The notes under the pieces are model-generated. The model was not told the origin of the DNA and made no database searches. It saw nothing but the letters and a program-made list of their open reading frames with translations. From Mytilus trossulus (taxonomy: Eukaryota): a DNA stretch of 64,000 nt. Below, piece by piece: positions 12,417-54,435 of the stretch (the first letter of the stretch is position 1; each line of letters opens with the position of its first letter). The DNA is taken from positions 91,181,630-91,245,629 of the forward strand of contig NC_086376.1 of the NCBI RefSeq assembly GCF_036588685.1. Reading direction: 5' to 3'. The position numbers were made by a program, and so were the translations under genes.

Positions 12417-12587
12417 NNNNNNNNNNNNNNNNNNNNNNNNNNNNNNNNNNNNNNNNNNNNNNNNNNNNNNNNNNNNNNNNNNNNNNNNNNNNNNNNNNNN
12501 NNNNNNNNNNNNNNNNNNNNNNNNNNNNNNNNNNNNNNNNNNNNNNNNNNNNNNNNNNNNNNNNNNNNNNNNNNNNNNNNNNNNNNN
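12417..12587. other. Assembly gap
   Basis: Run of N. Confidence 1.
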
Positions 12588-13133: not shown

Positions 13134-13420
13134 NNNNNNNNNNNNNNNNNNNNNNNNNNNNNNNNNNNNNNNNNNNNNNNNNNNNNNNNNNNNNNNNNNN
13201 NNNNNNNNNNNNNNNNNNNNNNNNNNNNNNNNNNNNNNNNNNNNNNNNNNNNNNNNNNNNNNNNNNNNNNNNNNNNNNNNNNNNNNNNNNNNNNNNNNNN
13301 NNNNNNNNNNNNNNNNNNNNNNNNNNNNNNNNNNNNNNNNNNNNNNNNNNNNNNNNNNNNNNNNNNNNNNNNNNNNNNNNNNNNNNNNNNNNNNNNNNNN
13401 NNNNNNNNNNNNNNNNNNNN
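13134..13420. other. Assembly gap
   Basis: Run of N. Confidence 1.
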
Positions 13421-15079: not shown

Positions 15080-18000
15080 TAGTCCAGCGGATATCAGAAT
15101 AATTGATCACTTTATGGTAAAAGCATGAAACTTGGCATAGGGAAAGATTAAGGGGTATAGACAAAATTCAGATATGGAGCCACAAAAAAAAATCCAATAT
15201 GGCCGCCAAATTCAAGATGGCCGACATAAGTATAACATAATTCACTTGATGAAGTCTTCCAATTTTAATGAGTTCAGAAGATGTCACAAACTTAAGGAAA
15301 AACAATTAAGATATGTCAATTATTATTTTTTTTAAACCTAATAACACAGAAATCATCAAAATGGCGTCCAAATTCAAAATGGCGCGTCAAAATGTCTAAG
15401 TTTGACAGTATTCGTATGTATACACCATCATTGTGTGATAGAAAGTTACCAAATCCGTGAAACTGGATAATTTGATATCGACAAAGGCCTACAATGTATC
15501 ATTGATACCTGGGTGCATAGATAATATTTTCAAAATGGCGGCAATATTCAAAATGGCGCCGTTTAACATGTGAAAATTTGACGTTTGTTTTTAAATATGT
15601 TATAAAAATAATTAAAAAATAATGGATCAATTATTTCAATACAAGCACGTATATACAAACATATTATTATTTAATGTAACAGGTGACATTAACTATGAAA
15701 TAAAAAATGTCTGATACAACTCAAAGTGGTGTCTTTGACGAGTTCTTATTTTTCACAGCTATAGGTAATGACCTTAATAGAAAATTTCACAATTTTCCTG
15801 AAATGAAAAAAAAACCCAACATATGCAGTATTGAATCAGTGCACAGAGTATTTCTTTTTTAAGAAATGAGATAAGAAATAAAAAAAACCTCACAAGTAAC
15901 TATTTAACATAACAACAGTTTAAAATTATTATTAAAATATGATACAAATGCAGGAAAATCAAAAGAAAGCATAGTCTTAATCAGTTTCTCTTTCACAGTC
16001 CGGTGAGCAGTTTCATAATGCTGTGCATTTTAATGCTGCTTTCAAGAATTTACATGCATGACATTGAAGCTTCAGCAAGCACAGACCAGAATGGTACCAT
16101 CAAGTTTTTGCCAACCAAATAAATCTGGTGAAGGCATACTTTGATTTGCAACTAAACAATTGCCCTAAATAACACTACCTTGGTAAGCTGCACGTTTCGT
16201 ATGTTCAATAAAGAAGTGCATCTCGTGTTGGAGGAATATTGTCAATTGTTCTTGTCTTCTGCGTGAAAAACTGTTTCCTTAACTCATTCACCATATAAGC
16301 TGTACTAGACCGATCATACAAAAGATCAATATATCGTTCTATTACTTTTCACACTTTTAAAATGTCCCCTTCATTTGGATTCTCGATAACCTGCAGAAAT
16401 GCTTTTGACAACTCCTCATATACGAACCATGTGTCCCAAGCTGATTTCTTACCTTTCCCAGAAAAAGCTGAGACTGTGTCACAACTGGTAAATGAATGGA
16501 ACAGTGGAAAGACTTTCAATTTCAATGGTCCTAGAGCAAGGCACAATCCATGGATTGAAATATATCGGAAGTTCTTTCCAGTGTCAAATCCTATCCACAG
16601 CTGTTCATTCATTTGAAAAAAGACACTCTCTTTGACTGGCATTTCAACATAGGTTCAGATTGGTCAAATGTTTGAACAACGCCTTGAACATCCTCTGAAA
16701 TATGTTGGAATAAAGATATACCTGTACCATAGAATGAATCTTTTAACGAGATACTGCTTGAATTGTGTTCAAGGTTGTCTACAGCAGATGAAGTAAACAC
16801 ATTTCGTAGTAGATTGGTAGTGCAAACAATACCTTTTTGGACATAACGACGACAAGCATCATTGGCCATGGAAGTATAATTTTCTAATCCTCGGTCGTAG
16901 GAGACAGACAGTTCAAGTTTGAAGAAAGTATCTACTAGATCACGTTTTCTAGTCTTAATCTGGATCGTGATTCCCAAATAAGCACAAACTGGAGGTTCAT
17001 GATCTTTCATGTGACGGTTGGATAGTTTCTTTGTACAACTATACATCAGAAGCTGTGCTATTGTTAATGTCGACTGAGAATATGAACGATCCTGAATGTT
17101 GGGTCCAAACTGAATGATACTGACCAAAGAAAGCAATGACTGAGGTACAGAAGCTGCCTGACATCCCTTTGGGAAGGTTCCTTTAAATTCTAAATTTGAT
17201 GCGAAAATATCTTTACGAACAAACCTAGCTGCTTTTGATATGTTGACAAACTCATTATCAAAGTCTTCTAAGCGGACTCTCTTCAATGCAGGACCAATGT
17301 CATCTTTGAAAGCAAGAATGTTTTCAAGGCCTTGTTTGTAAGCATCTTAGTTAGGGAAATAAGATACAATTATGTGTTTTAGTCGTGTACTATTAACTCG
17401 AGATGAAACATCTGCACCTATACATGTTGTTCTTTCCGTATAAAGTTTACATAGATCTGACAACTTGTAAACACTTATGGTCTCATCGCATGACCTTGTT
17501 TCATTTATATAGGAGACTAGTTCTGAAAATGTAATACCATGGATTTGACTTTCCTTCTTAGATTCGACATTATCATTTTTCATTTCAATTCGAGATGCAC
17601 GATTATATAAGGAAACTAAGCATTCAGAGTGGGACTTTGTTTCCTGTGCAATTAGATCACCAGTACTTAACTTTGCAAGTAACAATGTGTCATTTAATTT
17701 TATTGCACATTCTCTCACACGTGTATCTTGTCCAAACGTTGAGGACTCATGAAGGGCTTCTTGGCTATTTTCATTATGGAAAAAGTACACAGACGGGTTA
17801 CTGGTGGACTGAACGGAAAAGCTATGTATAGTTTTCTATGAGATGTGGTTGCTTTATTATCTATCCTCTCATGTGTTCGTATTTCTGCTCTATTCAACAT
17901 CGTCCTGTTCAGTTTTTAGTAGCAAGATTTGTGCCAACATGCCTTTTGGTAAATGAAAGACTGTGCTATTTCAGATCCCTCATCTAAGTTTTCAATGCAC

Positions 18001-21284: not shown

Positions 21285-23985
21285 TTGGATATTTGGCAGT
21301 TGTTTTCCATTCCTTCCTTTTGTAGGTATAGTCTAACAGGTTCGGTATATGGCAGTTGTTTTCCATTCCTTCCTTTGGTAGGTAAAGTCTAACAGGTTGT
21401 ATATATGGCAGTTGTTTTCCATTCCTTCCTTTGGTAGGTAAAGTCTAACAGGTTGGATATATGGCAGTTGTTTTCCATTCCTTCCTTTGGTATGTATAGT
21501 CTAACAATTGATATATGGCAGTTGTTTTCCATTCTTTCCTTTGGTAGGTATAGTATAACAGGTTTGATATATGGCAGTTGTTTTCCATTCCTTCCTTTGG
21601 TAGGTATAGTCTAACATTTCATATAAGCAGTTGTTTTCCATTCCCTCCTTTGGTAGGTATAGTCTAACATTTGATATATGGCAGTTGTTTTCCATTCTTT
21701 CCTTTGGTAGGTATAGTCTAATATTTGGTATATGGCAGTTGTTTTCCCTTCCTTCCTTTGGTAGGTATAGTATAACAGGTTGGATATATGGCAGTGGTTT
21801 TCCATTCCTTCCTTTGGTAGGTATAGTATACCAGGTTGGACATATGGCAGTGGTTTTCCATTCCTTCCTTTGGTAGGTATAGTCTAACAGGTTGGATATA
21901 TGGCAGTTGTTTTCCATTCCTTTCTCTGCTAGGTATAATCTCACATCTGTTATACGGCAGTTGTTTTCCATTCCTTCCTCTGGTAGGTATAATCTAACAT
22001 TTGATATATGGCAGTTGTTTTCCATTCCTTCCTTTGGTATGTATAGTCTAACATTTGATACATGGCAGTTTTTTTCCATTCCTACCTTTGGTAGGTATAG
22101 TCTAACAGGTTGGATATATGGCAGTTGTTTTCCATTCCTTCCTTTGGTAGGTATAGTCTAATATTTGGTATATGGCAGTTGTTTTCCATTCCTTCCTTTT
22201 GTAGGTATAGTCTAACAGGTTGGGTATATGGCAGTTGTTTTCCATTCCTTCCTTTGGTAGGTAAAGTCTAACAGGTTGGATATATGGCAGTTGTTTTCCA
22301 TTCCTTCCTTTGGTATGTATAGTCTAACAATTGATATATGGCAGTTGTTTTCCATTCTTTCCTTTGGTAGGTATAGTATAACAGGTTTGATATATGGCCG
22401 TTGTTTTCCATTCCTTCCTTTGGTAGGTATAGTCTAATATTTGGTATATGGCAGTTGTTTTCCATTCCTTCCTTTGGTAGGTATAGTATAACAGGTTGGA
22501 TATATGGCAGTGGTTTTCCATTCCTTCCTTTGGTAGGTATAGTCTAACAGCTTGGATATAACGCAGTTGTTTTCCATTGCTTTCTCTGCTAGGTATTATC
22601 ACACATCTGTTATATGGCAGTTATTTTCCATTCCTTCCTCTGGTAGGTATAATCTAACATTTGATATATGGCAGTTGTTTTCCATTCCTTCCTTTGGTAG
22701 GTATAGTCTAACATTTGATATATGGCAGTTGTTTTCCATTCCTTTCTTTGGTAGGTATAGTCTAATATTTGGTATATGGCAGTTGTTTTCCATTCCTTCC
22801 TTTGGTAGGTATAGTCTAACATTTGATAAATGGCAGTTGTTTTCCATTTCTTCCTTTGGTAGGTATAGTCTAACATTTGATAAATGGCAGTTGTTTTCCA
22901 TTCCTTCCTTTGGTAGGTATAGTCTAACAGGTTCGGTATATGGCAGTTGTTTTCCATTCCTTCCTTTGGTAGGTATAGTCTAACATTTGATATACGGCAG
23001 TTGTTTTCCATTCCTTCCTTTAGTAGGTATAGTCTAAAATTTGATATAAGGCAGTTGTTTTCCATTCCTTTCTTTGGTAGGTATAGTCTAACATTTGATA
23101 TAAGGCAGTTGTTTTCCATTCCTTCCTTTGCTAAATAAAGTCTAACATTTGATGTAAGGCAGTTGTTTTCCATTCCTTCCTTTGGTAGGTATAGTCTAAC
23201 ATTTGATATATGGCAGTTGTTTTCCATTCCTTCCTTTGGAAGGTAGAGTCTAATATTTGGTATATGGCAGTTGTTTTCCATTCCTTCCTTTGGAAGGTAG
23301 AGTCTAACATTTGATATAATACAGTTGTTTTCCATTCCTTCCTTTGGTAGGTATAGTCTAACATTTGATATAAGGCAGTTGTTTTCCATTCCTTCCTTTA
23401 GTAGGTATAGTCTAACATTTGATATAAGGCAGTTGTTTTCCATTCCTTCCTTTGGTAGGTATAGTCTAACATTTGATATAATGCAGTTGTTTTCCATTCC
23501 TTCCTTTGGTAGGTATAGTCTAACATTTGATATATGGCAGTTGTTTTCCATTCCTTCCTTTGGTAGGTATAGTCTAACATTTGATATATGGCAGTTGTTT
23601 TCTATTCCTTCCTTTGGTAGATATAGTCTAACATTTGATATATGGCAGTTGTTTTCCATTCCTTCCTTTGGTAGGTATAGTCTAACATTTGATATATGGC
23701 AGTTGTTTTCCATTCCCTCCTTTGGTATGTATAGTCTAACATTTGATATATTACAGTTGTTTTCCATTCCTTCCTTTGGTAGGTATAGCCTAACAGGTTG
23801 GATATATGGCAGTGGTTTTCCATTCCTTCCTTTGGTAGGTATAGTCTAACATTTGATATATGGCAGTTGTTTTCCATTCCTTCCTTTGGAAGGTATAGTC
23901 TAACATTTGTTTTCCATTCCTTCCTTTGGAAGGTATAGTCTAATTGTTGTTTTCCATTCCTTCCTTTGGTAGGTATAGTCTAATA
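21285..23985. repeat. 54/56-bp minisatellite, ~49 copies
   Basis: Unit TATGGCAGTTGTTTTCCATTCCTTCCTTTGGTAGGTATAGTCTAACATTTGATA (54 bp), with a 56-bp ...AACAGGTTGGATA variant. Confidence 0.97.
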
Positions 23986-25414
23986 TGTGATTTTGCCAAG
24001 TTTAATGGACTTTACCCTTTCTGAATTTACCTTGGATATAGTTTTCTTTTGTTCTACGGGAAAATCAGAAAGATAGAAAGAAAGCCAAACGTTAAGAGAT
24101 GGAATATATTCACAGTAGGTTTCAATACATTCGCGAACGCTCAAAATAATTATTGGATGAAAAGCGAATCTTTCTTTTGAAAGCAATACATGCCGTTTAA
24201 TAAAAGCGAATAGGGTTAATAATAAAATCATATGAACCCTCATTGGTAAAAAATTACTGATTTGGTATTGTTCGTTCAATTGTTTTCAAAAAGTAGCAAT
24301 TCAATTTGATAAGTTAATTTTAAAATATGTCTTGTATATATGGATGCTTGGTACAACTATCAAACAATAACTATATTATATGATTTAAAATATCAATATT
24401 TACAATAGTGATTGAAATTTCATAAAAATTCAACGAAGTAACTACTTATTTTCAAATTTTACTTATATGACGAATTATAATTGATTTCCTGTGGAACGAT
24501 ACTGGATTCATCTCATTAAGAGAAATTCCGCCGAAGTTTATTGTGAAATATTTTAATTTTAGATTCAAATGTGAATATCATGTTATATTTTTCTTTCAAG
24601 TATCTTTAAATTCAGAATTGAATGATGTTCTAGAAAAAAAAGTGTACAAAATAAAAGCAAGTGAATATCACATTTTAAGCAAGTCGTGTGCTTCATCGTT
24701 TAAATCTAAATCACTTGCTTTGATTTCGTATCTATTTTAAAAATCTGCATTCAATATAAATGATTGAATAGATTTTATAGATTATTCTGAATTATTGAAA
24801 ACTGATTCAAACATCAATACAGACACCTGACCTAAAGAAGCAAAGTATATAGGCTTAATTCCTTAATAGAGGGGAAGGCACAGTTTTATCAACGAAAATA
24901 TGTTGAAGACAGGACTTGATCCTGTATCAAAGTTTCTACACAATCTTGTCTTCGTCATTTGAAAAGAAGAGGACATACTTTCCGATTGTGGCAACCGTCA
25001 CCTTGTGAAAATACCAAAATCAACATGAAAGGGATTCTATGTCTTGATTTTCCTATTTAAAAATCTGTTATTTATTGACAAATAATTACACATAGACAAA
25101 TGTTTGCAGAATTATAAGGTATATGAAATGTCAACACTCAATTATAAGCTAATGAATGCCTTGTAGAAAGCTGTGAAAGCATTCTTCATTGGTGGAATTT
25201 CTCAGATTCACGTGAAGTTAAATATGATGTTTGATTGGCTTTTGACAAATTGTAAAGGCTTTCCACCCAGGAAAAGAGAATGTTTTCCAGAATGAAGGTC
25301 TAGATTTTGCTGTTGACATACATGAAGTGAAAACAAAATTATATCAAACACACTCAACAATAAGCATAGAAGACTAAAGGTCTGAATTCAACTTTGATCA
25401 AATCAACCTTGCTT

Positions 25415-29800: not shown

Positions 29801-31249
29801 CAATGACATGGACCATTTCATTATCACAAATATGAATGAAAGACACGTTTTTTCTACTTTATCAGATACGCTCCAAACAAAATAAGAGCGTGTAATTAGT
29901 AAGGTGACACCGCGTGCACTGGCTAAATTTTACATAAACGGTTTTAAAGAAAACACTCTCTCCCAAACTCGACAAAACGTTGTCGAACTAATAGTTATTA
30001 GTAATGCTGTTCTTCGATATCTTTGTGCCGACATAAATGTCGTTCTTCAATAGAAAGATGTTCTATTACCGGTGTTTTTTTTGGTTAGGAGGGGAAAGTG
30101 TTTCATTTTCAAAATGTAACTTGTAGTAATTAACATTTTTCTTTAATAGCTTTGCCAAAGTTTCTGCAAAGATAAGGCAGCACAACTGTGTGATGTATGA
30201 TAAAGATACAAATGGACCCAGCATTATACCACTGTTCATGATATCGAATGTCTTGCAAAAGCGAACGAACCAAAGAGACATCCAATCTAGTAAACCAATA
30301 ACTAAACGAACTGTCAACGCCATGTCAAACAACGATAAACAACAGGTCACAAAACACAACAAAGCAAATGAAATGTTGCTGACGTCTGTTAGTTTTTATT
30401 GAACTTGTTTTCGTGTTATGTAGTGTTATAGGAATTTCCATTTTTCTTCATATCCATCCTGTAAATGCTGTTACTGACTTTGAAATCGTTGATGTTTTGT
30501 AATGATTTAAATGTCAACCCAATTAACCAATAACCCAGGGACATAGTGGTTTTATAGTATAGCAATTGAAACAGATCAACCAAATTCAAATTACTCTAGA
30601 CACATTTTAGTACTATACGACTAATTACACGCCCCCTATTATCAGTAAATATCTTGTCCTCCTTTTAATAAATTGATCATTGTATTATTTAGAGGCAAAG
30701 GCTTCCTTTTTGATATTTACAAGTACACACTGCTTACAATGGGAGATCACTGATTTGCTTTTCTCTCTCATTAAACATTTTCACAGAGAATGTTCCCGTG
30801 ATGATTGAGTTACAGTAAGTAATAATGGGAAATCCGAAGACAGTTTGTGGTCATCATTTCCTGTACATTATTTCCATATATAAACCTAAAAACGTTTTCA
30901 ATATTATACTATTATAATATTTACGACCTATATGGCAGAATTATATTGTCTACAACACAGGACACCACTCCTTCATTGATCGCTGTAACAATACTTTCGC
31001 GTAGGCAGTGACGTTTGTATTATCGATTTAGGGTCGATCAAACCGGATCATCGTCATTAGATTTCTTCACGTAGAATTCTTGTTTTCTTTTAGAGAGATA
31101 GACAACAGAATGGATATGCATATGATACTTTTTCTTGAACAATCATGACAAAAGGTTCTTTTACATTTGTTTTAAGAAATACGCGTGTTAGCTTATTATA
31201 GTGTTCTGTTAAGCGTTGGATATAATTTTTGATTAGTTTGGTCTTTGCT

Positions 31250-31688
31250 TTATAGCTCTATTATTACTAGATAGAAACTAATATTATTAGAACAGTGTTT
31301 TAATAAACTTTTGTAAAATAATATAAACAAAAAGGGGGTTCCTTATCTAGTTTTCATAATTAATTGTTAAAAAGAGAGAATATATGCTGATTTACCTTTA
31401 TTTCAAATTTAATAGCCTACGATGAATAGTGTTAAGACATTGATATCTTGAAAACAATGAAATGAGATTTATAGCTCTACCATTACTAGATAGACACTAA
31501 TATTATTAGAAAAGTGTTTTAATAAACTTTTGTAAAATAATATAAACAAAAATGGGGTTCCTTATCTAGTTTTCATAATTAATTGTTAAAAAGAGAGAAT
31601 ATATGCTGATTTACCTTTATTTCAAATTTAATAGCCTACGATAAATGGTGTTAAGACATTGATATTTTGAAAACAATGAAATGAGACA
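31250..31688. repeat. 219-bp direct tandem duplication
   Basis: TATAGCTCTA..ATTACTAGATAGA.ACTAATATTATTAG starts at 31251 and 31470, and the two copies are near-identical. Confidence 0.92.
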
Positions 31689-33052: not shown

Positions 33053-33739
33053 TTAACGGACAAATCACACAAAGACACTGAACTCCGAGAAAAATTCAAA
33101 ACGGAAATTCCCTAATCAAATGGCAAAATCAAATAATAAAACACATAAAACGAAGAGATTACAACTTTCATATTCCTGACTTGGTACAGATATTTTCGAA
33201 TGTAAAAAATTGGTGGATTAAACATGATTTTATAGCGCAAAACCTCTCACTTGTATGACAGTCTCATCAAATTTCATTATATTTACAACGATGCATAAAC
33301 AAAACAGACCCAATAGGTGAAATTGTCAAAATATGGGTACAGCAGACATCAATGTGTAATAATTGCAAACCAAACAAATGTTTAACAAAGAAGCACAAAA
33401 ACCATTTATCAAATCTAACAACCAGATTCATTAATTCTCGTGTTTAACGTCAGAAAATGTAACGTCGCACAGAAAGAAATATGAAATAATTTCATTCAAA
33501 GTATTTTCAAAAGTATAATTTCACGCGCGTCTGGTGTACTTAATTATAATCCTGGTAACTTTGATAACTATTAACATGGGGAATGGTGGTATACAGGGTT
33601 GAAAAATCAAAAGTTTTGATAGAACTTATTTCAGAAAAAGACCGAGATTAACAATAATCCAGAAGTTCTTTTAAAAATTTAAGAATCCACATATGGTTAA
33701 TATCACTAGGCGAGTGAACAGTTTCACAGTACCTCTTTA

Positions 33740-34310: not shown

Positions 34311-36226
34311 CAACTACTCAACATAAGTACAAACAGTCAACATCAGTTTTAATAAGCTTCACTCAAAAGATCGCGGTAGTATTCACAACAACACCTAAAA
34401 TAAAAACGAGAATGCACCTAAATATGAGAATTCGCAGCTACTAAAAGCTTTGAACTATCAGAGCAAAATACAACTTATAAATAAATCATGTTTTCTGAAA
34501 ATCAGGACAATTTGTGTCACGATAAAACGAATATAACAGTGTTTATCAGTGGTAAAAGAATTCCATTATAATCGTCAGAAAGTGAGGTGGTGGTGTTGGC
34601 AAACACCAAAGAAATGTAATAATGTTACCTATTGAGAACCATTGAGAACTATTGACAACCGTTGGTACACCTATTTTCCTGTTAGCAGTCACTATCTCTC
34701 CAGGAACTGAAACATATTAACTAGAATGTCGTATCAAGCGGCAGAAATAAAATGGATTATATGTTCTGATTAAACTCATCATAGATACCATGATTCAAAT
34801 TCTATATTTGCGCCAGACGCGCGTTTCGTCTATAGAAGACTCGTCAGTGACGTTTGAATAAAATATTGATAAAAAGGCCAATTAACGTCCGAAGTTGAAA
34901 AGCATTGAGAAATTAAAAAAAAATTCACCAGCAGTTGCATCGACCCAGTGGTTGTAAATAAACTCTGCATAGCTATTGAATATATAGGATTGAAATAGTC
35001 CCAAAAAAAAGTTCTCTTTAGACCTTTCGACACAGAGTTAAGTCCTCGTTGGAACTAACTATGAATTTAAACATCCTACGAATTAGCCCAAGGTACCGTC
35101 GATATCGATGATATTGAATCAGAATAGATGATTTCTTAAGACAACAATACCAATTCATGGTGTCAAATAATGTAATAGATGAATACAGAGTCAATCTACA
35201 TTTAAAATCAACATTTCTAGATTTGAAACAATATGTATAGACAAATAACATAAATATAGGAAATCATGACATTGTTCAATGCCAAACTATAGATATCGAC
35301 AGATTGAAGAACCGTCAATGTACCTATATGCATAACAAAAAAATCTGGTATTCTTTTATTCATTGGTAATTAAATAAATTTTTATACAATCATATAAAAC
35401 ATTATTCAATAATCGAATACAGTATTGTATTTGTCACCATTAAGAATAAGTTTATTTAAAGGATCGATCAGTTCACACGGAGCTTACTTAAATTCCCGGG
35501 ATTGGTTAAAAAAGAATAACATTGAAAATTGATTATGTTATCCCGCTTGCAATCGGTTATATACTGCAAATTTCCAAACCATAATAGAATTTATCGAAAG
35601 GATGTAATTAATTCTCAATATCTCAATATATCTCAATAATTTATCAGTAGTTCAAATATTGCATTAATTGAAATTCAAAACATATTCATTCATCATAATT
35701 ATTTGTTTCTTGTTTTCTTAAAAAGGCGATATTGAAATGAATAGCAAAAAATGAGATTTAGTAGGTAGGTAATCTGGTATAATAACAAGAGCTTTTCCGT
35801 CCACTGAAAATATTTTTACGCCTTCGTTCTATTTCTAGTTTTGATTTTTATTTTCAATATTTCTTACTGCATTTTAGACCACATACTACGTTACACGATT
35901 AGAACTTCTAATGAAAGAAGAACACAAAAGAATGTACTTGAACATCTATTCGACAATGTCTTTTCCGAACTAAGACAGAAATTCCAATATCAAAATTCAA
36001 ATTAATCACTGCCTGACATATATAATTAACGATTTGAAGTGACATATATGAAAATTATTATAACAATCACATTCCGACACACTTCTAAGTACATACAATA
36101 TAATGGATTTCATCTTAATATGTCGCTAATGGAAAAAAAGTTTAAATTACATGTAATGGTTTGATTAACACATAGTTTAATTGACATTAGTCTGGATTTC
36201 AATTCTGTTTCTGTTTATTTTTCTCT

Positions 36227-38221
36227 TTAATATTTACTGAAGCCTTCGTTGATGACACCTCCATCTACACTCCTATACGTCCCTGGCATTTCTGCATCGC
36301 TAATGGCTATTTCTTTTTCTCCATTTGGAAAAGAGATATCATCATTATTACTCCGAGAAGGAGACTTGAGTGGAAGTGAGGTAATTCCGGTATAAATAGG
36401 AAGTAAAAATAATGTCGTCAACATGATTAAAATCAATATTGCTCGGGAAATAAATAAGACCACAAGTACTCCGCATACTAATGCAAACAGAGAGTATCCC
36501 CATAAGTGATGGAAACTAGATATAAATGGATTGCTATTTCTGAACTCATCCTCTACTGCCCTTTGAGGAATCCATTTAACATTCTTTGCAAGATTTGCTT
36601 GAACAGCTTTAAAAATTCTAACACAGCCAACCATAGCTTCGGGTGTAAATTGGAAGAACGATGCTAAAGTTTCTAGCAAAACATATTTATAATTATTTCT
36701 ATTGCATGTTGCAAATTTTGGGAACACTAGAACGAGAAACATAATAAGGATAATTGAGGCATATCTATATCGTAAATGTACCGAGATGTGGATAATTACA
36801 TACAACATGAGTAATGGCTTCATTACCATTTGTCTCAGTGCTGAATAGGCAATGTAACTGCTAGCGAAATTCAGTGGAGATTCTGTTCTCAGTTTGGTTG
36901 CATTAAATTTCTCCCCCTGAAGTTTCTTTTTTATCCATCGCATAGGCCTTCCGATGCCATTCTCCCAAAAATACATAGCTAATAAAACTTCTCCCCGGTT
37001 CCATCGACGTTCACGAATACTCCATGTCACAAAATTTAATGATGGTGCTTCAAGAAGGAAGACTGATCCGGCATAAAGCGGTTTTAAAATGGCAGCCTCA
37101 AATGTGTCGTGACTGAGAACATCAATTGGAACTCTTTCAATCGGATGATCTCTGCTTCCAATAACATTATCTATGTAAATTCTATTTTTTAGCAATGCTT
37201 TGCCAAAATAAGCTGATTGTCCTAATAATTCCATTACAGCATTTGTCATTGGTTCATAGATTTGCTGGCGTATTGTTTCAATATGCATGAATATTGTATC
37301 CGTAGGTTGACAATGAATTTTTATCGCCGGTTGAATGATACCCTTTTCTGGATTTGCAGCGGCAATGTCTAGCAGATCGAAGACACATTTTTTCGGAACA
37401 CCCGTATCTCCGTCTAATACCAGTGTATAGTCAAATTTTCTACCAAAGATATTTTTGACGTCATCCGAATCATAAAAAAGTTGTTCACCTTCATTCCTAG
37501 CACCTTTGCCATAAAATAATGGGTCACAGTATGAGAAAGCCTCGTCTTCACCTTCAGACAGAAGCATAAGATCTTGATACTGACCACATTTTCTTAACAC
37601 CCGAGATACCCGGTGTATTACCATAAATTCTCTGGCATATCGATCACATATATCATGTAAATATTCGTGAAAGAACAACGTTTTATCTACATCTTCATAC
37701 AAATTCCACACATTCTCTAAACGTAGGGGATCAATAGATTCGAAATCATCTTTTGCAAAACAAGATCCTTCATGAAATAGTTCATCGAAAATGGCCGATC
37801 TGAATCGATCTCGAACTTCCAGTTCGTAGTCTTTTAAACTTTCGTCGCCCGTTGCACTTACTAAAACAGCTGACACATTCGGACTAAGGTTTCCCATGTA
37901 AGCTTCGTACATAGTTTCCATACACTCATCTATTTCATCTCTACTCATTGCTAATAAATTGTAATTGAGAACGATTGTCAATCTGTCAGATTTAGCTTTT
38001 TCTAGTCCTCTTTTATCGCCTCCTATCAAAAGAGTTGCCATTGTTTGAGTAGGAAATTCCATAACGCTGCCTTGAAGAACACCAAGGACAACTACAATGA
38101 TAATTCCGTTGATATAGTTAGTCCTTTCCCAATCCACATTAATAACGTTCAGAATAATAGCAATAAAAGCCAATGACACCCAAGTCGTAAAATACAAGTA
38201 GATTCTTGTTATTCTGTTCAT
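36227..38221 (-). CDS. mdoH: OpgH/MdoH-like membrane glucosyltransferase (GT2 family), 664 aa, no introns within the CDS; candidate bacterial-origin gene
   Basis: The ORF is uninterrupted. It has two N-terminal hydrophobic helices, then in OpgH order: HR..RKCGQ (OpgH RKxGN), YTLVLDGDT (YMVVLDADS, the DxD motif), GIIQ, YFGKALLK (YWGHNAIIR), VLSHDTFEAAIL (ILSHDFVEAALM), EAP, RERRWNRGE (RDRRWCxGN), then C-terminal TM helices, LLETL..F..P and WIPQR. An in-frame TAA lies 6 codons upstream (38237-38239) and the context is TCAAA-ATG, which fixes the start. Confidence 0.88.
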   Translation of the reverse strand: MNRITRIYLYFTTWVSLAFIAIILNVINVDWERTNYINGIIIVVVLGVLQGSVMEFPTQTMATLLIGGDKRGLEKAKSDRLTIVLNYNLLAMSRDEIDECMETMYEAYMGNLSPNVSAVLVSATGDESLKDYELEVRDRFRSAIFDELFHEGSCFAKDDFESIDPLRLENVWNLYEDVDKTLFFHEYLHDICDRYAREFMVIHRVSRVLRKCGQYQDLMLLSEGEDEAFSYCDPLFYGKGARNEGEQLFYDSDDVKNIFGRKFDYTLVLDGDTGVPKKCVFDLLDIAAANPEKGIIQPAIKIHCQPTDTIFMHIETIRQQIYEPMTNAVMELLGQSAYFGKALLKNRIYIDNVIGSRDHPIERVPIDVLSHDTFEAAILKPLYAGSVFLLEAPSLNFVTWSIRERRWNRGEVLLAMYFWENGIGRPMRWIKKKLQGEKFNATKLRTESPLNFASSYIAYSALRQMVMKPLLMLYVIIHISVHLRYRYASIILIMFLVLVFPKFATCNRNNYKYVLLETLASFFQFTPEAMVGCVRIFKAVQANLAKNVKWIPQRAVEDEFRNSNPFISSFHHLWGYSLFALVCGVLVVLFISRAILILIMLTTLFLLPIYTGITSLPLKSPSRSNNDDISFPNGEKEIAISDAEMPGTYRSVDGGVINEGFSKY

Positions 38222-38300
38222 TTTGATTCTATTACTTTATTTTCGTCAGATTTGTATTCCGTGCGCTAATTCGGTAAATTTAAATATCCAAATTCAGTAT

Positions 38301-41299
38301 CTGAAAAAAATAAAAGAAAACTATATAAAAGATAGAATGAAGTAATATTTCGACAATAAAAATTATGAACAGCGGATTATTACAATCACATTAATTCTTG
38401 GTCTATTTGACTAGGGACTCTCCGTTTTTTTATTTTCCTCGGAGTTCAGTATTTTTGTGATTTTCCTTTTCTTTTTAATCAATTTAGAAATAATTTGTAA
38501 TCAATGGAAAAGGGTATTAAGAATTATTTATACAAATACAGATCAAATACAAATCGATGCAAATCAAAAGAATAACTTTTAGAAGAGACCGCCCATCTAA
38601 TAAGTACATTGAATTCCATCACTTGTTCTAAATCAATCACTACAAAAATGTTGTAGAACATCAACAATACAATTACAATTGGGACCGTGTGAAGGATTCA
38701 ATGACATTTATAGTTTTTGCTTTATATTTATCACTAATTTAATTAATTTTTTTTAATATGAAATTTTTTATGTGAATTTCTCGATATTTTAATGATATAT
38801 TCGTAAAAAATGTTGACTATAAAATGTTCTTCACTCCCGTAGTACGCCCATCCAAAACATAATACAAATTATGAGTAATAGGTGAAAAGTACAAAATAGT
38901 CAATCTATTTATGTTCATCAATATTTATTTCAGTTTTACGTGATTTTCTCGTTAATTATATTTTTATGAATTTGGTAATAAAAAGTTACAATAACATTGT
39001 TAACTTTATCTATCAATCACTTTTCATAACAAAATTTAGCTTCATTAATTAATTTGTTTACAGACACCATCATGATTTAGCTGACAATTACTGTATGATC
39101 ACGAACAAGTTACATGTGTCTAAGTCGCAACCCCAGCCTCATTTGTCTTTCATGACGTTACTGAATGTGACTTGTCACCGATTTTCGCTGTCAGGAGCAA
39201 CACAACGGTGCCGTTTTTTTTAATCATATTGAGATAAACCCTCATTTCTTTCAAAGGGATTTATGTGGACTTTAACGTTGTGTGTTGAATTTCGTAGTAC
39301 TAATTATATATTAATATTTGTTAGATTTCTGTACAGTCCATCTTTAACGTTGTGTGTTGAATTTCGTAGTATAATTATATATTAATATTTGTTAGATTTC
39401 TGTACAGTCCATAGAAGTAAATGGTCTTGTCTCCTATTCAAGCTCGAACTCTTTCGTTCAGTCATGTTTTAAAGGTAAACAATTTATATGTAAAAGTGAT
39501 TTATATATTCTCGTTCAATTTGGCATTTTGGTGGTATTGCTATGAAGGTATTCAAAACATGATTTCAAAGTTAGCCTAATTTAAAAAACAAATAAACAAA
39601 TACCGACCCCAATGTAATTCCAAAGGAGGAACTCGATACATACTAACGTTATCAGCCAACGGAACGAGTAAAACATAAAATCATAAAAATACTGAACTCC
39701 GAGGAAAATTCAATACGGAAAGTCTCTAACCAAATGGCAAAATCAAAAGCTTAAACACATCAAAGAATGAACATCAACTGTCATATTTCTGACTTGGTAC
39801 AGGCATTTTCTTAGGTAGAAAATGGTTGATCTAACTTGTTTATAGCTAGCTAAACCTCTCACCTGGATAACAGTCGTGTAAAATTCCATTATATTGACAA
39901 CGATGTGTAAACAAAGCAAACAGACGTTATAGGTAAAAATGTCAAAATAGAGGTAAGGCAGTCATGACTAGTAACCAGCGATAAGCCCCGTGAATTTTAA
40001 TGTTCCTTTGGTATCTTTCGCCTCTCATGTGCAAGGAGGATAATCATTTGTACTTAAGAAGAAAGACATAATAAAAAAACCGTTTTGTTTTCCTTAATCA
40101 TGAAACTAACGTGTCTGGATTAAAATGACAAGCGGTATGGCCATTTTTATTATTTATTTCACAGCAGAGACTTTTCCTTTAAGTCTTTGATTTTTGTCAT
40201 ATAAAAAAGTAAAATCACAAAAATACTGAACTCAGAGGAAAATCAATTTGGAAAGTCCATAATCACATGGCAAAATCAAAAAACAAAACGCATCAAAAAC
40301 GAATGGACAAGAAATTCACAGTATTATAAGGTCATAGTGTGTTCTTCGTTAATATTCTAACGACAATTATAAAACCACTTACAATAGTGTAAATGTATGT
40401 CAGAACATATCATAAAATAATAAATACATATACAGAGTTAAAACTTCCATTTTGACAAATTTTTATTGGAGGCATTCTTTACCAAAAACACAATTGATAT
40501 GCAAGTATTTCAAATATTTTCTATTTAATATAAAGTAATTTATGCATTTTGATAAAAAAAAAAAATGTAGTTAAAACAGGCAACATTTTCAAATATGTTA
40601 AAAATCTAACAAATATTATTCAGAAAACATCTTGGTAATGTACGCAAAATATGATTCGCTTAACTCTATTCATGTTATAATGTCAAAATTGTCTTATTAC
40701 CAAACTAACATAAACAAAATGTATATTTCCGTATTATGAATAAAAAATATCCATGGAAGTTGTCATTAAAAAAATCTTGAAGAATCAAGAATAATACGAA
40801 CTATTGATTCAGTAGTATTATGAATGGTACCAGGAATAAATTTCAATCCACAATCAGCGCATTACGTATAGTGTTGGATTTTTACTAGCAGATATGGTGT
40901 ATACATTTTTAATTCATGTTTAAGTTTAAAAATCAGATTTCACATTTAAAAATCTGAAAACTATTCATGAACCAAGGTGCAAACTCCTTTTGACTAAGTT
41001 AACCTGGCATTCGTTGTAATTTGATTTAGTCATAAATATCGTCTCGTATTAATACACTTTCATAAGCTTTTAATTATTTAGGGTATGTGCGTTACTGTCA
41101 AGTATATCGATATACACATTTCAGACGCACAAAATATAGTTTTTTTTTAGAGCCCTTGATTTTAGAAAGTAAATCCGTAAACAAACTTAAAAAAACGCAA
41201 AGCAAAGCAAATTGCTTACATCGGTGTTCTTTTTATAAAAGTCACAATGAAACCTTCTTTATTAAATCGTTGACTTGAATTACCAAAGACTTAACTTAC
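38301..41299 (-). other. Putative 5'-UTR intron of the OpgH-like gene
   Basis: Strong minus-strand acceptor GTTTTCTTTTATTTTTTTCAG|ATA ends at 38301, 79 nt upstream of the ATG. A consensus donor AAG|GTAAGT lies at 41299. The pairing of donor and acceptor is inferred. Confidence 0.5.
39270..39412. repeat. ~71-bp direct tandem duplication
   Basis: CTTTAACGTTGTGTGTTGAATTTCGTAGTA...GTACAGTCCAT occurs twice. Confidence 0.9.
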
Positions 41300-41554
41300 C
41301 TTGCTACCAGTTAAATGAAGGGGTAATAGCTTGCTCAAACGTGTTCATTTATTCAATTCTAAATGATTCCGGTCATCTCCTTATGGGATTGTACAGTAAC
41401 AAAACATCCTTAACTTCCGACTAAACGATACTTTCATTGCTTGATGTCTTATGCCTACGGCGTTCGACTTAATTAATTAACAATTTTTTTTATGAAAAAG
41501 TACAAGGTTGTCTGTTACGTGTTGTCTTGAACTGATTAATTACCTTTCGCTCTA

Positions 41555-41640
41555 AACAAATGACGTACAAGGATATGTGTACATAAGTGAGATATCTGTA
41601 CACAAATATAGTTACTTATCGGGAGGGGGCGGATGAAAAA
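41555..41640 (-). promoter_or_regulatory. Candidate promoter of the OpgH-like gene
   Basis: CRE-like TGACGTA (~41561) and a GC box GGGAGGGGGCGG (~41621-41632) in an otherwise AT-rich region, 260-330 bp upstream of the candidate donor. Confidence 0.25.
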
Positions 41641-44436
41641 CTACCATACCTAATAATTAATAACACATGAGAAATATAATAAAAGTAGTATTTGCACTTT
41701 AATGTACTAAACAAACGTGTGTTTAATATTTTCCCCTATATTACTAACAATTTACAATACTGAAAATCATTCGTTTCGCTGAGATGAGAGAGAAGTTTAA
41801 GCCAATTAATATTTAAAAAAAAACTGTCATCTGATTTGTGTATACATTTAACATTTACAAACTCCTTGGATCATTTTCTGATTCTATAAATTGGCATTTC
41901 ATTTGGTCGTTTCAAATTTTTTTATCAGTCAAATCTTTATTCCGATCAGTGTGAGTTTTCATTTTCACGTAACATCTTTGTCTTCAATCTGATGACACCA
42001 AAATAGTCTGAACTGAAAATTGCAGGTTAAGTTCTATTGGCTATCTTGACATTTGTTTTCTGAGACTTGATTCGCATAACTAGAAATATTTATAGCGCAA
42101 TTTTAACTTTTGAAAGTCGTCAGAATTTTTTATCTTGTTTGATATATTCTAAATAAATACGCCTTTAAGGAAAACTGTCGTATTCCTGACATGGTGAAAA
42201 ATGTTGTAATAAACCCGAATTTATAGCTAGCTAAACTAGTCGCATTAAAATAAACTGTTGGCAGCTATTGCAAAATTGTGTACGCCAGACCTGCGTTTCG
42301 TCTAAAAAGACCTCAGTTAGTGAGAAATATTTATGTAATACATTATATACCATTATTCTCGTAACCGATGTAAAAAGAATTACACAAATATACATTTATG
42401 CATTCAATACAATGTAATTTAAAATGCAGGGTTGAAATTTAATGTGTTTATCCAGAATATCCCAACATATATTTATACATTTTGTTTAGTTAGGACAGAG
42501 TTTTAAAAATTGTTATACAGCGGTATACTACTGTTGTCTTTATACTGCAGAACTGATGTTGTTTATAAAAACCCATAACAAATATATATATATATATATA
42601 TACTAGAAATACGTTTCTGTAAAAGGAGGTGGTTTTTTTTTTGGAATAGACTTTATTAAATGACAAGGTGTTTTTTTACAGTCTTTATATAAATATTTAG
42701 GTTTAATTGATGATTTGGCTAGGTTTTATTTGATTAATAAGAAGATATAAGAAAGTATGTTCTAACTTGGATGCGTCCAAAGCGTTTTTCTGGATTAACC
42801 ATTAATAGGAACGCTTAGATCTATTATTTGAAAGACATTTAAGATTCAAAACAGTTGAAGAGCTATTTTACCAAAAAGGGAGCAACACACATCCATCTAA
42901 ATGCAACTTTGGTCATAAAAAAAGCAATTCAAAATTTCAATGACCAAATTATTTCTAGCTAGTCTGTTAAAGAGTTTATTTGTACTTGATTTTGAGGGTG
43001 AGCATCATAATAAAACAATGCAATATTAATACTCGTTATTAAAAAAATGCGTTATTTCTCCCAATAACTTTTTTTCAATAAACCGGATGTCATGGTTCAA
43101 TACATTCATATCTTCTTTGACTGTCCATGATGTTAAAATACTAAATCCCTGTTGTTGATGTGATTCATAAATGTTTCTCGATTGCCGTTTTTATGTAGAT
43201 TAGACCTTTAATTTGAATGATTTTACACTAGGGCATTTTAATGAGCCCTTTAAAGCTTGCGTTCCGTGTTAAAGACTGTACTTTGACCTATGATGATTTC
43301 CTTTTACAAATTGTGATTTGGATAGAAAGTTGTCTCATTGGCATCAATACCACATATTTTTATATCTGTTTGTTAAAAGGAAAGAAAATACTGTCGGACA
43401 AGTATAAGTTTTTCATTAAAAAATGAACGTGGGCTGGTGTTTTTACCAATACCGTTAATCCTACATTGTTTATTACGGTTAGTTTACGTTATAATGATGA
43501 ATAAATCATAAGAAAAAGATAAATTCCATTCAATTTACATGACTTTGCAGGAGTGATATTTCAGCAAAACAAAGCGTTTCTGAAGTTTATAACATTGCAC
43601 ATCTGCGTCCTACTCATAAAATTGTCGCCAAACTTATAAAAATATGTCAATACCATTTGTCAAATTCGTCCTGCGTTCGGGATCATATTTTAATCTACTT
43701 TCCTTATTGTGTCTATCATGTATTCAAAAATTATGATAAAACTTAAGTCGCGCAGACAATTATACTTATGCTTTGCTGAAAGAAAAAGATCTTTTTGATA
43801 TGATATTGATATAAAGTATATGACTATCTGTATCAAAACGCATGTAATTTTTCCATTATAACCAAAATATTATTTAATAAAACACTGGATGATACTGAGA
43901 TTGTTTATTATTCTTTGTCCGTGTAGTCATTATATACTGAAGAAAAAGGCGTAAGCTTGTCTTTACAATATAAATATATCAAACAAATTATTACAAAACA
44001 AAATCTCAAATCAAAACAATTGGAATTTAAAAAATAAAAATGAAACTTATACTTCATAAATTTGTTGAGTCCGAAATAACCTTTCCTGGATTTAGTTTTT
44101 TTCATATCCCAAAAAGATGAACGATAAGGATTTATAATAACCTTAATATTCGTAGAAGTATAAGGATCACAATGGGCACAAAACATAACATGTGTCTGTT
44201 TAGTTTACGCATCAGTGTCATATATAACGGAATTTGATGAGACCGTCTTACAAAGTGAGAGGTTTAGCGCTATGAAACCAGACACTGTTGTCCATTCGTT
44301 TTTTATGTGTTTTGTCATTTGATTGTGCCCTGTGATTAGGGACTTTCCGATTAGATTTTCCTATGAGTTCAGTATTTTTGTGATTTTACTTTTTTCGAAT
44401 ACATGGACGGTCAACTTTGCTTTATGGAGTGTAAAG

Positions 44437-53566: not shown

Positions 53567-53859
53567 TAATATTGGTCGTTGTGTTAAACTGTAGTTAAAG
53601 TATGCCACTCTAAAGGCATGCATATGTTGAAGGCCGAACATTGACCTATAATAGTTTACTTTTGTAAATTGTTATTTGGATAGGGAGTTGTCTCATTGGC
53701 GCTGATACTACATCTTCATATGAAAACAGAATACTTCTTTTTATGCTCTGGTTACGATCGTATCCGTCATATCACATTTTTTTCTGTAATATTTGACGTT
53801 AGTGTTTCGATTATTAAAGATGACATTCATGCATGTATACCTATTTTTGAAGAAACATA

Positions 53860-54435
53860 TAGTCGTCTCATTTATTGGCCTTCTTTTGGATGAATGGAAG
53901 GACTTACACGGTGGGTGGGGAAAACTTCCGTTTGCAGTAGGGGCTATTGACGGAACTTCAACTGAAATTTATAAGCCGATAACAGAACCACAGGAACAAT
54001 ATTATTCGAGATACAGACAATATCACTGCATTCATACTCAAGTTGTTATATCGAACGAAGGCAGGATATGTTATGTCGAATGTGGATTTCATGGACATCA
54101 AAACGATGCTCAGCATTATATGTTGATGCGAAATATTGGACAACAACTACCTTTCCCGGATGAGCTATTTCTGCTGGGCGATAAAATTTATCCTAACAGA
54201 CATCCAGTACTGACAGCTTATACTAGACAGCAAATTGTTAGAAAACCCCGGAATAGGCAGAGAAAATGTAGAAAGTTAAATAGACTGATTACCCACTATA
54301 GAGTTATGGTTGAACACGCAATCGAAGAATTAAAAAAATATAAAGTTATGGGGACTTAGTGGAGACAGCGATTAACATCTGTTGTGACCATATGCGCTGT
54401 TTTCGTTTGCCGCCGTAAAGACTTATTTACAAAAT
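53860..54435 (+). pseudogene. Harbinger/IS5-like DDE transposase (DDE_Tnp_4/HARBI1-like), C-terminal fragment
   Basis: GAIDGT, G..ND, LLGDKIYP and RVMVEHAI form the catalytic D-D-E motifs. The N-terminus is missing and there is a premature TAG at 54357-54359. Confidence 0.85.

What the first reader, a model, noticed from the sequence alone, without database searches (positions are those of the whole stretch)
36227..38221. Intact bacterial-type OpgH/MdoH glucan synthase in an animal chromosome: candidate horizontally acquired beta-glucan synthesis system
Seen in the sequence: this is the only long, undisrupted non-repeat ORF in 64 kb, with no introns inside the CDS. It carries the OpgH motif series (R210-K-C-G-Q, D270-G-D272, GIIQ, YFG, S370-H-D372-T-F-E-A, R403-E-R-R-W407, WIPQR) and a 2-TM / GT2 domain / multi-TM layout. 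It is AT-rich like its flanks, surrounded by host repeat families A and B, more than 22 kb from any assembly gap, and on the same scaffold as a spliced animal gene. Established knowledge: OpgH makes the beta-1,2-glucan backbone of osmoregulated periplasmic glucans in Proteobacteria. The familiar animal processive GT2 enzymes (chitin, hyaluronan and tunicate cellulose synthases) carry ED...QRxRW-type motifs rather than SHD...RxRRW. Inference: the animal has domesticated a bacterial polysaccharide synthase and may make a glucan not characterised in animals (mucus, shell or byssus matrix, osmotic stress or microbe interaction). I cannot check whether automated annotations already label it.
Basis: partly seen in the sequence, partly recalled or inferred. 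Interest (0 to 1): 0.92.

Follow-up and report, generated by a model that had tools for sequence, protein, structure and literature searches.

The report
Animal OpgH/Cgs-like glucan synthase gene
This bivalve chromosome carries a real, transcribed, strongly conserved gene for a membrane sugar-polymerising enzyme distantly related to bacterial beta-1,2-glucan synthases, but its close relatives are in other molluscs, ribbon worms, acorn worms, dinoflagellates and giant viruses rather than bacteria, so it is an old, unstudied eukaryotic gene family and not a fresh bacterial capture.

Summary
It is a genuine host gene. An RNA contig splices a canonical GT-AG 5'UTR intron (38301-41299) full of host repeats onto it. 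Polymorphisms in the CDS are 25 synonymous to 1 non-synonymous. The 1.3-Gb genome holds two further intact paralogues.

The protein belongs to the OpgH/Cgs superfamily. It is 26% identical to E. coli OpgH over 170 catalytic-core residues. [quoted passage not shown] It fails every curated OpgH model (41 bits against cut-offs of 328-1131).

No bacterial or archaeal species representative carries the family signature. Relatives at 40-98% identity are in Mollusca, Nemertea and Hemichordata. Dinoflagellate relatives are often fused to ABC-transporter halves. Marine giant-virus relatives are about 30% identical. Animal monophyly is not rejected, and the genome has no OpgG.

RefSeq already labels some orthologues 'glucans biosynthesis glucosyltransferase H-like'. 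I found no paper on them. The product, probably a beta-glucan and possibly beta-1,2, is inferred, not shown. The scan had noted this gene's 5'UTR intron before (s1-820943).

The parts
36227..38221 (-). Single-exon CDS, 664 aa: 2 TM helices, GT-A catalytic domain (about 80-420), interface helices and a C-terminal TM bundle (about 450-615), disordered tail 624-664
   Evidence: RNA contigs cover it end to end
38222..38300 (-). 5'UTR part of exon 2 (79 nt), with A at -3 before the ATG
38301..41299 (-). 5'UTR intron, 2999 nt, GTAAGT...polypyrimidine-CAG; contains very high-copy host interspersed repeats (39550-40350)
   Evidence: Contig X11 record 2 joins 41300 to 38300. The three RNA runs have no depth on the unique intron bins, while DNA run X4 covers all 30 bins. 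Splice sites; repeats
41300..41357 (-). Non-coding exon 1 (at least 58 nt; probably about 86 nt or more, judged from the unplaced 86-nt end of X7 contig 24)
   Evidence: table 8
35500..36226 (-). 3'UTR, at least about 727 nt (the X7 contig reaches 35756 and runs 256 nt further); a candidate AATAAA lies just beyond at 35456-35451
   Evidence: the lower bound and the poly(A) signal are inferred

Best explanation
The ORF is a bona fide nuclear gene of a pteriomorph bivalve. It has two exons, with a non-coding exon 1, a 3-kb 5'UTR intron and an intronless CDS. It encodes an integral-membrane, inverting GT-A glycosyltransferase of the OpgH/Cgs (beta-1,2-glucan synthase) superfamily.

It belongs to a distinct subfamily with the signature KCGQYQD / DxD / IIQP / SHDTFE / RERRWN. 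That subfamily is shared by molluscs, a nemertean, hemichordates, dinoflagellates and other marine protists, and marine giant viruses. It is only remotely related to bacterial OpgH.

Likely mechanism (inferred): the cytosolic GT domain binds a UDP-sugar, most likely UDP-glucose, through the DxD motif (D270/D272). D372 of the SHD motif acts as catalytic base, and R406/W407 hold the acceptor end. A beta-linked glucan grows at the membrane face. By analogy with the only two characterised enzymes that carry SHD...RxxRW, the linkage may be beta-1,2. The product is then passed across or along the membrane by the enzyme's own TM bundle or by a separate exporter, which in dinoflagellates is fused to the enzyme as ABC-transporter halves.

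The gene is old in animals (at least the molluscan ancestor, possibly bilaterian) and was not captured from bacteria in this lineage. Whether animals got it vertically or by ancient transfer from a protist or giant virus is open.
For: Shown:
- Intact ORF and conserved motifs.
- Spliced RNA contig across a canonical intron, in RNA runs from three studies that lack the unique intron sequence.
- 25 synonymous to 1 non-synonymous differences, pN/pS about 0.01.
- The window sits at 91 Mb on a chromosome-scale contig, and two more intact paralogues lie at C4:69.76 Mb and C7:67.14 Mb.
- Orthologues at 60-98% identity in bivalves, gastropods and cephalopods, about 50% in three hemichordates, 39% in Tubulanus.
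- Dinoflagellate and MMETSP proteins at 46-52% identity, with ABC_tran and ABC_membrane domains on both sides of the GT module.
- About 30-33% identical proteins on giant-virus MAG contigs, next to a fused topoisomerase II, minor capsid P8 and DUF5755.
- None in 185,579 prokaryotic species representatives.
- Superfamily link: NCBIfam MdoH E 7e-11; BLASTP to E. coli OpgH 26% over 170 aa, E 2e-14; hhalign probability 97.6.
- A profile search of the PDB finds no glycosyltransferase other than Cgs/NdvB, E 2e-11.
- Foldseek E 2e-15 and VIA Z 24.2 (rmsd 3.6, 515 residues, model 1-629 on Cgs 400-993), against Z 18 or less for BcsA and HAS.
- Query D270, D372 and R406 align with Cgs D624, D739 (catalytic base) and R773 (with PMC10901819 read).

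Inferred: donor sugar, linkage and export route.
Against: No biochemical evidence for substrate or product exists for any member of this subfamily.
- The query fails the Pfam GT2 models (11.8 bits against 27) and all curated OpgH models.
- OpgG is absent.
- The Cgs cyclase and GH94 domains, and a conserved equivalent of the Cgs Tyr primer, are absent (Y322 is Tyr in only 25 of 58 sequences).
- The tree root is unstable. The free ML tree puts the protist clade with molluscs at 100/98 support, while an equally good or better tree keeps animals together. The history is therefore unresolved.
- Tissue and timing of expression are unknown. The RNA runs are coded and were seen only as contigs.
Confidence: 0.78

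Rival explanations
1. One reading: a bacterial OpgH/MdoH gene was horizontally acquired by this animal or its near ancestors and domesticated.
For: The catalytic core is recognisably OpgH-like. The CDS is intronless in an intron-rich genome, in all three paralogues. The distribution among animal phyla is patchy. The superfamily is overwhelmingly bacterial, so an ultimate bacterial origin is plausible.
Against: No bacterial sequence comes close. There were only 191 hits in 1.84 billion representatives, and the ten weak or deep ones I scanned were all far below the OpgH cut-offs. There was no signature hit in 185,579 prokaryotic species. The nearest relatives are eukaryotic and giant-viral. The gene predates the split of bivalves, gastropods and cephalopods. 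GC matches the host and a spliced 5'UTR intron is present.
Confidence: 0.05
2. Ancient eukaryote-to-eukaryote or virus-mediated transfer: animals (once in an early bilaterian or lophotrochozoan, or separately in molluscs, nemerteans and hemichordates) obtained the gene from a marine protist or giant virus, or dinoflagellates obtained it from animals. This concerns origin only and is compatible with the functional explanation above.
For: Among named records the gene is found only in Mollusca, Nemertea and Hemichordata. Mollusc-dinoflagellate identity (46-53%) is as high as mollusc-hemichordate (about 50%) and higher than mollusc-nemertean (39%). The free ML trees group the protist clade with molluscs to the exclusion of hemichordates at 100/98. 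The CDS is intronless. Giant viruses carry the gene in a conserved block.
Against: AU tests do not reject mollusc monophyly (p 0.53) or all animal rows together against protists plus viruses (p 0.62, with a slightly higher likelihood). Giant-virus and nemertean branches are long and attract each other. Many unnamed ENA and Logan rows could belong to further animal phyla. Direction cannot be inferred without a reliable root.
Confidence: 0.45
3. The enzyme is a real GT, but its product is not a beta-1,2-glucan. It could be another beta-linked polymer or a glycolipid or glycoprotein modification, with the SHD/RxxRW motifs being ancestral features of the clade rather than linkage determinants.
For: It is only 12-15% identical to Cgs overall and 26% to OpgH over the core. 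The accessory machinery of both bacterial systems (OpgG; cyclase and GH94) is missing. The literature I read describes beta-1,2-glucans as bacterial products (PMC12102758).
Against: Both characterised enzymes that share this motif set and this exact TM-GT-TM core make beta-1,2-glucan (PMC10901819). The structural match to Cgs stands clearly above cellulose and hyaluronan synthases (Z 24 against 18 or less).
Confidence: 0.35
4. Contaminant DNA or a chimeric assembly join.
For: None found.
Against: A spliced transcript crosses an intron packed with host high-copy repeats. DNA and RNA runs from 8 studies hold the stretch. The gene lies in the interior of a chromosome-scale contig. Host-like GC, paralogues and orthologues across molluscs all argue against it.
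Confidence: 0.01

Closest known systems
[quoted passage not shown]
   Same: The whole 2TM-GT-TM-bundle core superposes (Z 24.2, rmsd 3.6 A, 515 residues). Apart from a chance-level 25-residue match (E 0.46), it is the only PDB family found by the sequence profile (E 2e-11). It shares DxD, the SHD catalytic Asp, and RxxRW followed by RG.
   Different: Cgs is about 2800 aa, with an N-terminal domain, a cyclase domain and a GH94 phosphorylase domain, all absent here. The Tyr694 primer loop has no conserved equivalent. Overall identity is 12-15%. Cgs is bacterial (Rhizobiales, Brucella).
OpgH/MdoH, the osmoregulated periplasmic glucan glucosyltransferase of Proteobacteria (GT2)
   Same: The catalytic core motifs align one for one: VLDxD, ANPxxGIIQ, LSHDxxEA, RxRRWxxG. 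It has similar size and a TM-GT-TM layout, and it is the source of the automatic name 'glucans biosynthesis glucosyltransferase H-like'.
   Different: Only 170 residues align (26% identity). The score is 41 bits against curated cut-offs of 328-1131. The OpgH N-terminal cytoplasmic extension is missing, there is no opgG partner, and no bacterial member of this subfamily was found.
Processive GT2 synthases of animals and viruses (hyaluronan synthase, chitin synthase, cellulose synthase BcsA/CesA)
   Same: The same membrane-embedded GT-A architecture with interface helices (Foldseek E 1e-9 to 1e-5, Z 15-18).
   Different: These carry (T)ED and QxxRW motifs rather than SHD and RxRRW, match clearly less well than Cgs, and are 9-13% identical.

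Membership tests
OpgH/MdoH (NCBIfam PRK05454 equivalogs) | Score above the curated whole-protein cut-off of an MdoH equivalog model | tested here: not met
   Best is 40.9 bits (NF003958, cut-off 419); the other models give 15-39 bits against cut-offs of 328-1131. Only residues 253-414 match. The same holds for the giant-virus and other deep members.
OpgH/MdoH | Catalytic motif series DxD ... IIQ ... SHD ... RxRRW | tested here: met
   Aligned residue for residue with E. coli OpgH. Invariant or nearly so in 58 family members.
OpgH/MdoH | Works with the periplasmic partner OpgG/OpgD (MdoG, PF04349), usually encoded in an opgGH operon | tested here: not met
   No PF04349 match in the 1.3-Gb genome, while the E. 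coli control matched. No neighbouring gene of that kind in the window.
OpgH/MdoH | Makes a linear beta-1,2-glucan backbone from UDP-glucose | not testable with these tools
   Needs enzyme assay and linkage analysis.
[quoted passage not shown] | GT84-type GT domain docked under a compact TM bundle | tested here: met
   Foldseek E 1.8e-15, TMq 0.62. VIA Z 24.2, 515 residues aligned, model 1-629 on chain 400-993. Profile E 2.3e-11.
[quoted passage not shown] | Fused cyclase and GH94 phosphorylase domains for cyclisation and length control | tested here: not met
   The protein is 664 aa and ends after the TM bundle. There are no further domains, and no Pfam hit beyond sub-threshold GT2.
[quoted passage not shown] | Tyr (Y694) in the IF1-homology loop as covalent glucan primer site | tested here: inconclusive
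   Cgs Y694 falls in an insertion relative to the family profile. The nearby Y322 of the query is Tyr in only 25 of 58 homologues.
Pfam GT2 families (Glyco_trans_2_3, PF13632) | Score above the gathering threshold | tested here: not met
   Query scores 11.8 bits against 27. Only 4 of 16 diverse family members match PF13632, at a 0.01 E-value cut-off.
Eukaryote/giant-virus OpgH-like subfamily (defined here) | Full-length alignment with invariant K211-C-G, D270, Q297-P, G340-K, S370-H, R403, R406, G410 | tested here: met
   Alignments A1 and A2. 160 full-length domain matches to the family HMM.

The most novel reading that the evidence does not exclude
Molluscs, nemerteans and hemichordates synthesise a so far undescribed beta-glucan, plausibly beta-1,2-linked like bacterial OPGs and cyclic glucans. 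They would do so with a synthase family that they share with dinoflagellates (where it is fused to an ABC exporter) and with marine giant viruses, and that moved between these lineages horizontally rather than coming from bacteria. This would be the first beta-1,2-glucan synthase lineage of eukaryotes and their viruses.
Probability: 0.3. Interest if true: 0.8.

Novelty: new variant of a known kind. Interest (0 to 1): 0.62.

Why it matters
In the literature I could read, beta-1,2-glucans and their synthases (OpgH, Cgs) are treated as bacterial (PMC12102758, PMC10901819). A conserved, expressed, selectively constrained relative exists in three animal phyla, in dinoflagellates and in giant viruses. 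This points to an unrecognised glycan in marine invertebrates, with possible roles in mucus, osmotic adaptation, the extracellular matrix of shell or byssus, or microbe interaction. It also points to an unrecognised glycan in virus-infected protists.

The family gives a concrete, testable enzyme. The dinoflagellate ABC-GT-ABC fusions offer a natural hint that synthesis is coupled to ABC export, as Cgs is coupled to the separate exporter Cgt in bacteria. For genome annotation, the automatic name 'glucans biosynthesis glucosyltransferase H-like' should not be read as evidence of bacterial origin or of contamination.

Tried and rejected
I could not fetch DNA of the 83-98% identical orthologues for a between-species dN/dS, nor see the gene context of the unnamed protist and ENA proteins. 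I used the polymorphisms listed by read laying instead. Only 40 of 164 differences are printed there, so the 25:1 count is a sample.
- phmmer of the single protein against the PDB was blank. The family profile was needed.
- Two genome-contig scans, viral scans with P0206 and P0176 and a metagenome scan with P0109 found nothing.
- The P0157/P0176/P0206 group (24-27% identical) stays unplaced. Contig L037 has 57% GC and a hybrid histidine kinase but otherwise no recognisable genes, and the group has only 9 environmental members. I do not call it bacterial.
- A bacterial 'hypothetical protein' cluster at rank 2 in the ESM Atlas (score 0.94) is a lead only and was not verified.
- The dinoflagellate spliced-leader core was not found on the metatranscriptome loci.
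- The first impression from the trees, that protists are nested in molluscs, was tested and not upheld.
- The 512-aa gene that follows the GT in giant viruses has no Pfam match and no match in the bivalve genome, so it is not a shared partner.
- BFVD holds no close viral structure.
- Six literature searches found no paper on OpgH-like genes in animals, dinoflagellates or giant viruses. The HGT compendium's supplements are not held.
- I did not build a tree with many bacterial OpgH or Cgs sequences, because only E. coli OpgH was at hand and only about 170 columns align.
Full report
**1. The observation**

The window holds a 664-aa ATG-to-stop ORF at 36227-38221 on the minus strand. It is the longest ORF in the 64 kb by a wide margin. 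The other ORFs of 180 aa or more are:
- two low-complexity repeat ORFs at 21501-23767;
- an ORF without any family match at 16609-17286;
- a DDE_Tnp_4 transposase fragment at 53793-54359.

GC is 0.357 in the 2-kb bin that holds most of the gene (36001-38000), against 0.24-0.37 across the window's other bins. The only N runs are at 12417-12587 and 13134-13420.

**2. It is a real, expressed host gene**

The window lies at 91.18 Mb on contig C4 of a 1.30-Gb, 541-contig assembly. Twenty public runs from eight studies hold the stretch.

I laid three probable RNA runs (three studies) and one DNA run on 35750-41740:
- The RNA runs give contigs over 35756-38301 but no depth on the unique parts of 38550-41300. 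The DNA run covers all 30 bins.
- One RNA contig (X11 record 2, 2146 nt) joins 41357-41300 directly to 38300-36213, in the gene's orientation.
- The joint has textbook splice sites: GCAAG|GTAAGT at 41300/41299, and a polypyrimidine tract with CAG|A at 38301/38300.

So the gene has a non-coding first exon and a 2999-nt 5'UTR intron. The ATG follows 79 nt into exon 2. The 3'UTR is at least about 0.7 kb, with a candidate AATAAA at 35456-35451. The intron contains interspersed repeats with enormous summed depth in the DNA run (39550-40350). This ties the gene to host DNA.

Of the 26 differences printed by read laying inside the CDS, 25 are synonymous and one is not (S592P). That gives pN/pS of about 0.011 and a binomial p of 4e-16 against neutral expectation. 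The genome has two more intact, intronless paralogues, at 57% and 52% identity. Contamination or misassembly can be set aside.

**3. What the protein is**

Pfam gives only a sub-threshold GT2 match, 11.8 bits against a cut-off of 27. The NCBIfam MdoH equivalogs match residues 253-414 at up to 41 bits, far below their cut-offs of 328-1131. Against E. coli OpgH the core aligns at 26% identity over 170 residues (E 2e-14; hhalign probability 97.6). Four motifs match one for one:
- VLDxD;
- ANPxxGIIQ;
- LSHDxxEA;
- RxRRWxxG.

An AlphaFold model built on 58 homologues is confident (pLDDT 89.7, pTM 0.87). Its best structural match is again Cgs:
- Foldseek E 1.8e-15;
- VIA-align Z 24.2, rmsd 3.6 A, 515 residues, model 1-629 on Cgs 400-993.

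Cellulose and hyaluronan synthases follow at Z 15-18.

In the numbering of the Cgs paper (PMC10901819), the UDP-coordinating D624, the catalytic base D739 and R773 of the RW motif correspond to D270, D372 and R406 here. D270 and R406 are invariant and D372 is Asp in 57 of 58 family members. The protein is therefore a catalytically competent-looking member of the OpgH/Cgs superfamily. It consists of just the TM-GT-TM core. It lacks the OpgH N-terminal extension and the Cgs cyclase and GH94 domains. The genome has no OpgG/MdoG, while the E. coli control was positive.

**4. Who else has it**

The word-indexed search gave 177 relatives:
- 83-98% identity in unnamed Logan, ENA and JGI records;
- 78% in Pinctada;
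- about 70% in scallop and oyster;
- 60-70% in other bivalves, gastropods (Haliotis, Lottia, Patella, Littorina, Batillaria, Babylonia, Nucella) and cephalopods (Argonauta, Octopus);
- about 50% in the hemichordates Saccoglossus, Ptychodera and Glandiceps.

RefSeq already names the Saccostrea and Haliotis proteins 'glucans biosynthesis glucosyltransferase H-like'. A long-branched member is from the nemertean Tubulanus polymorphus. A search seeded with it added no further named phylum.

The exhaustive HMMER scan of 1.84 billion cluster representatives found only 191 proteins at E of 1e-3 or less. The ten weak or deep ones I tested all fell far below the OpgH cut-offs.

Non-animal members:
- Gymnodinium smaydae and an MMETSP protist have proteins of about 2200 aa in which the GT module (46-52% identical to the bivalve protein) sits between ABC-transporter halves.
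- Proteins with two or three tandem GT modules also exist.
- A distant paralogue occurs in Noctiluca.
- Proteins of about 600-650 aa, 28-33% identical, lie on giant-virus MAG contigs.

The giant-virus contigs are AT-rich and densely coded. They hold a conserved block of fused topoisomerase II, the GT, a 512-aa unknown protein, tRNA-Leu, DUF5755 and minor capsid protein P8.

Two scans of one genome for each of 185,579 bacterial and archaeal species found no carrier of the family's signature peptides. One small environmental group (P0157, P0176, P0206; 24-27% identical) is of uncertain origin.

**5. History**

ML trees (83 rows with a quick search, 47 rows with a careful search; LG+C20 PMSF) recover:
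- a mollusc orthologue group containing the window gene together with Pinctada, Mizuhopecten and Saccostrea (100/100);
- a second bivalve paralogue group with the two other genes of this genome;
- a hemichordate clade;
- a strongly supported protist clade;
- a giant-virus clade.

The free trees place the protist clade with the molluscs (100/98). However, the giant-virus root attaches next to the long nemertean branch, and the tool flags this join. AU tests do not reject mollusc monophyly (p 0.53). They also do not reject a tree with all animal rows on one side and protists plus viruses on the other. That tree even has a log-likelihood 4.5 units higher (p 0.62).

What can be said:
- The gene was present before the bivalve-gastropod-cephalopod split, and it duplicated within molluscs.
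- Animal monophyly is allowed.
- Several features keep an ancient transfer between marine eukaryotes or via giant viruses as a live alternative: the patchy animal distribution, the intronless CDS, and mollusc-dinoflagellate identity as high as mollusc-hemichordate identity. I put this at about 45%.
- A direct bacterial donor for this lineage is not supported (about 5%).

**6. Mechanism**

This section is inferred. The cytosolic GT-A domain would bind a UDP-sugar through D270/D272. D372 would deprotonate the acceptor hydroxyl, and R406/W407 would hold the terminal sugar. A beta-linked chain would grow at the membrane interface.

The only characterised enzymes with this motif set and this core fold, OpgH and Cgs, both make beta-1,2-glucan from UDP-glucose. 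That is the best guess for the product, at about 50-60% given that a polymer is made.

The Cgs paper reports that the Cgs TM domain forms no export channel, and it cites the separate ABC exporter Cgt. The dinoflagellate ABC-GT-ABC fusions suggest the same division of labour in this family. In animals the exporter, if there is one, is unlinked and unknown.

**7. Novelty and verdict**

I found no paper that treats these genes in animals, dinoflagellates or giant viruses. Recent work on beta-1,2-glucan enzymes describes the polymer as bacterial.

The gene is not unique to this genome, and automated annotation already hints at its nature. The underlying object is real, constrained and biochemically unexplored: a eukaryote and giant-virus branch of the beta-1,2-glucan synthase superfamily. 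I rate it a new variant of a known kind, with interest 0.62.

**Limits**
- The RNA evidence comes from contigs only.
- Organism names are coded.
- The taxon of many relatives is unknown.

Noticed in passing
P0124, P0125, P0127 (about 2200 aa); P0085: In dinoflagellates and other marine protists the OpgH-like GT module is fused between ABC-transporter halves (ABC_tran ... GT ... ABC_membrane + ABC_tran). This is a natural fusion hinting at coupled synthesis and export.
   Followed up: partly
P0121 (3301 aa, 3 modules), P0122 and P0123 (2 modules), L017:72-8981: Single long ORFs from transcript-like contigs carry two or three tandem copies of the whole GT module.
   Followed up: no
L004, L023, L026, L027, L029, L032, L034 (giant-virus contigs): There is a conserved block of fused topoisomerase II (about 1140 aa), the OpgH-like GT (about 600 aa) and a 512-aa protein with no Pfam match (48% identical between two viruses). 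In L004 and L029 a tRNA-Leu(CAA) follows. In L004, DUF5755 and minor capsid P8 come next. The 512-aa protein has no match in the bivalve genome.
   Followed up: partly
window 39550-40350 and 44288-44395: Very high-copy interspersed repeat copies sit inside the 5'UTR intron, with summed depth up to 1.8 million in a DNA run. An 83-nt family occurs at 33068, 39682 and 40215. A 108-nt inverted pair lies at 40203-40310 and 44288-44395, 90% complementary.
   Followed up: no
window 21501-23767 (-): Two ORFs (192 and 385 aa) lie in a strongly AT-skewed stretch (AT skew -0.35 at 22001-24000). Their only matches are repetitive, low-complexity ones to ribosomal_L24/KOW-like profiles, so this is probably a coding-looking tandem repeat.
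   Followed up: no
window 53793-54359 (+): A 188-aa ORF with a DDE_Tnp_4 (Harbinger/PIF-type) transposase domain, E 3.5e-19. It is probably a transposon remnant.
   Followed up: no
window 31249-31686: Two tandem copies of a 219-nt unit, 96% identical.
   Followed up: no
L037 (MDSV01223748.1, 16.9 kb, GC 57%): A distant 564-aa relative (P0206 type, about 25% identical, passes Pfam Glyco_trans_2_3) lies beside a hybrid histidine kinase/response regulator and several ORFs without any Pfam match. The organism type is unclear.
   Followed up: partly
G000:C4:69757361-69759232 (+) and G000:C7:67138279-67140123 (-) (L002, L003): Two further intact, intronless paralogues of the gene occur in the same genome. 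Near-identical proteins appear in Logan assemblies (P0073, P0090).
   Followed up: partly
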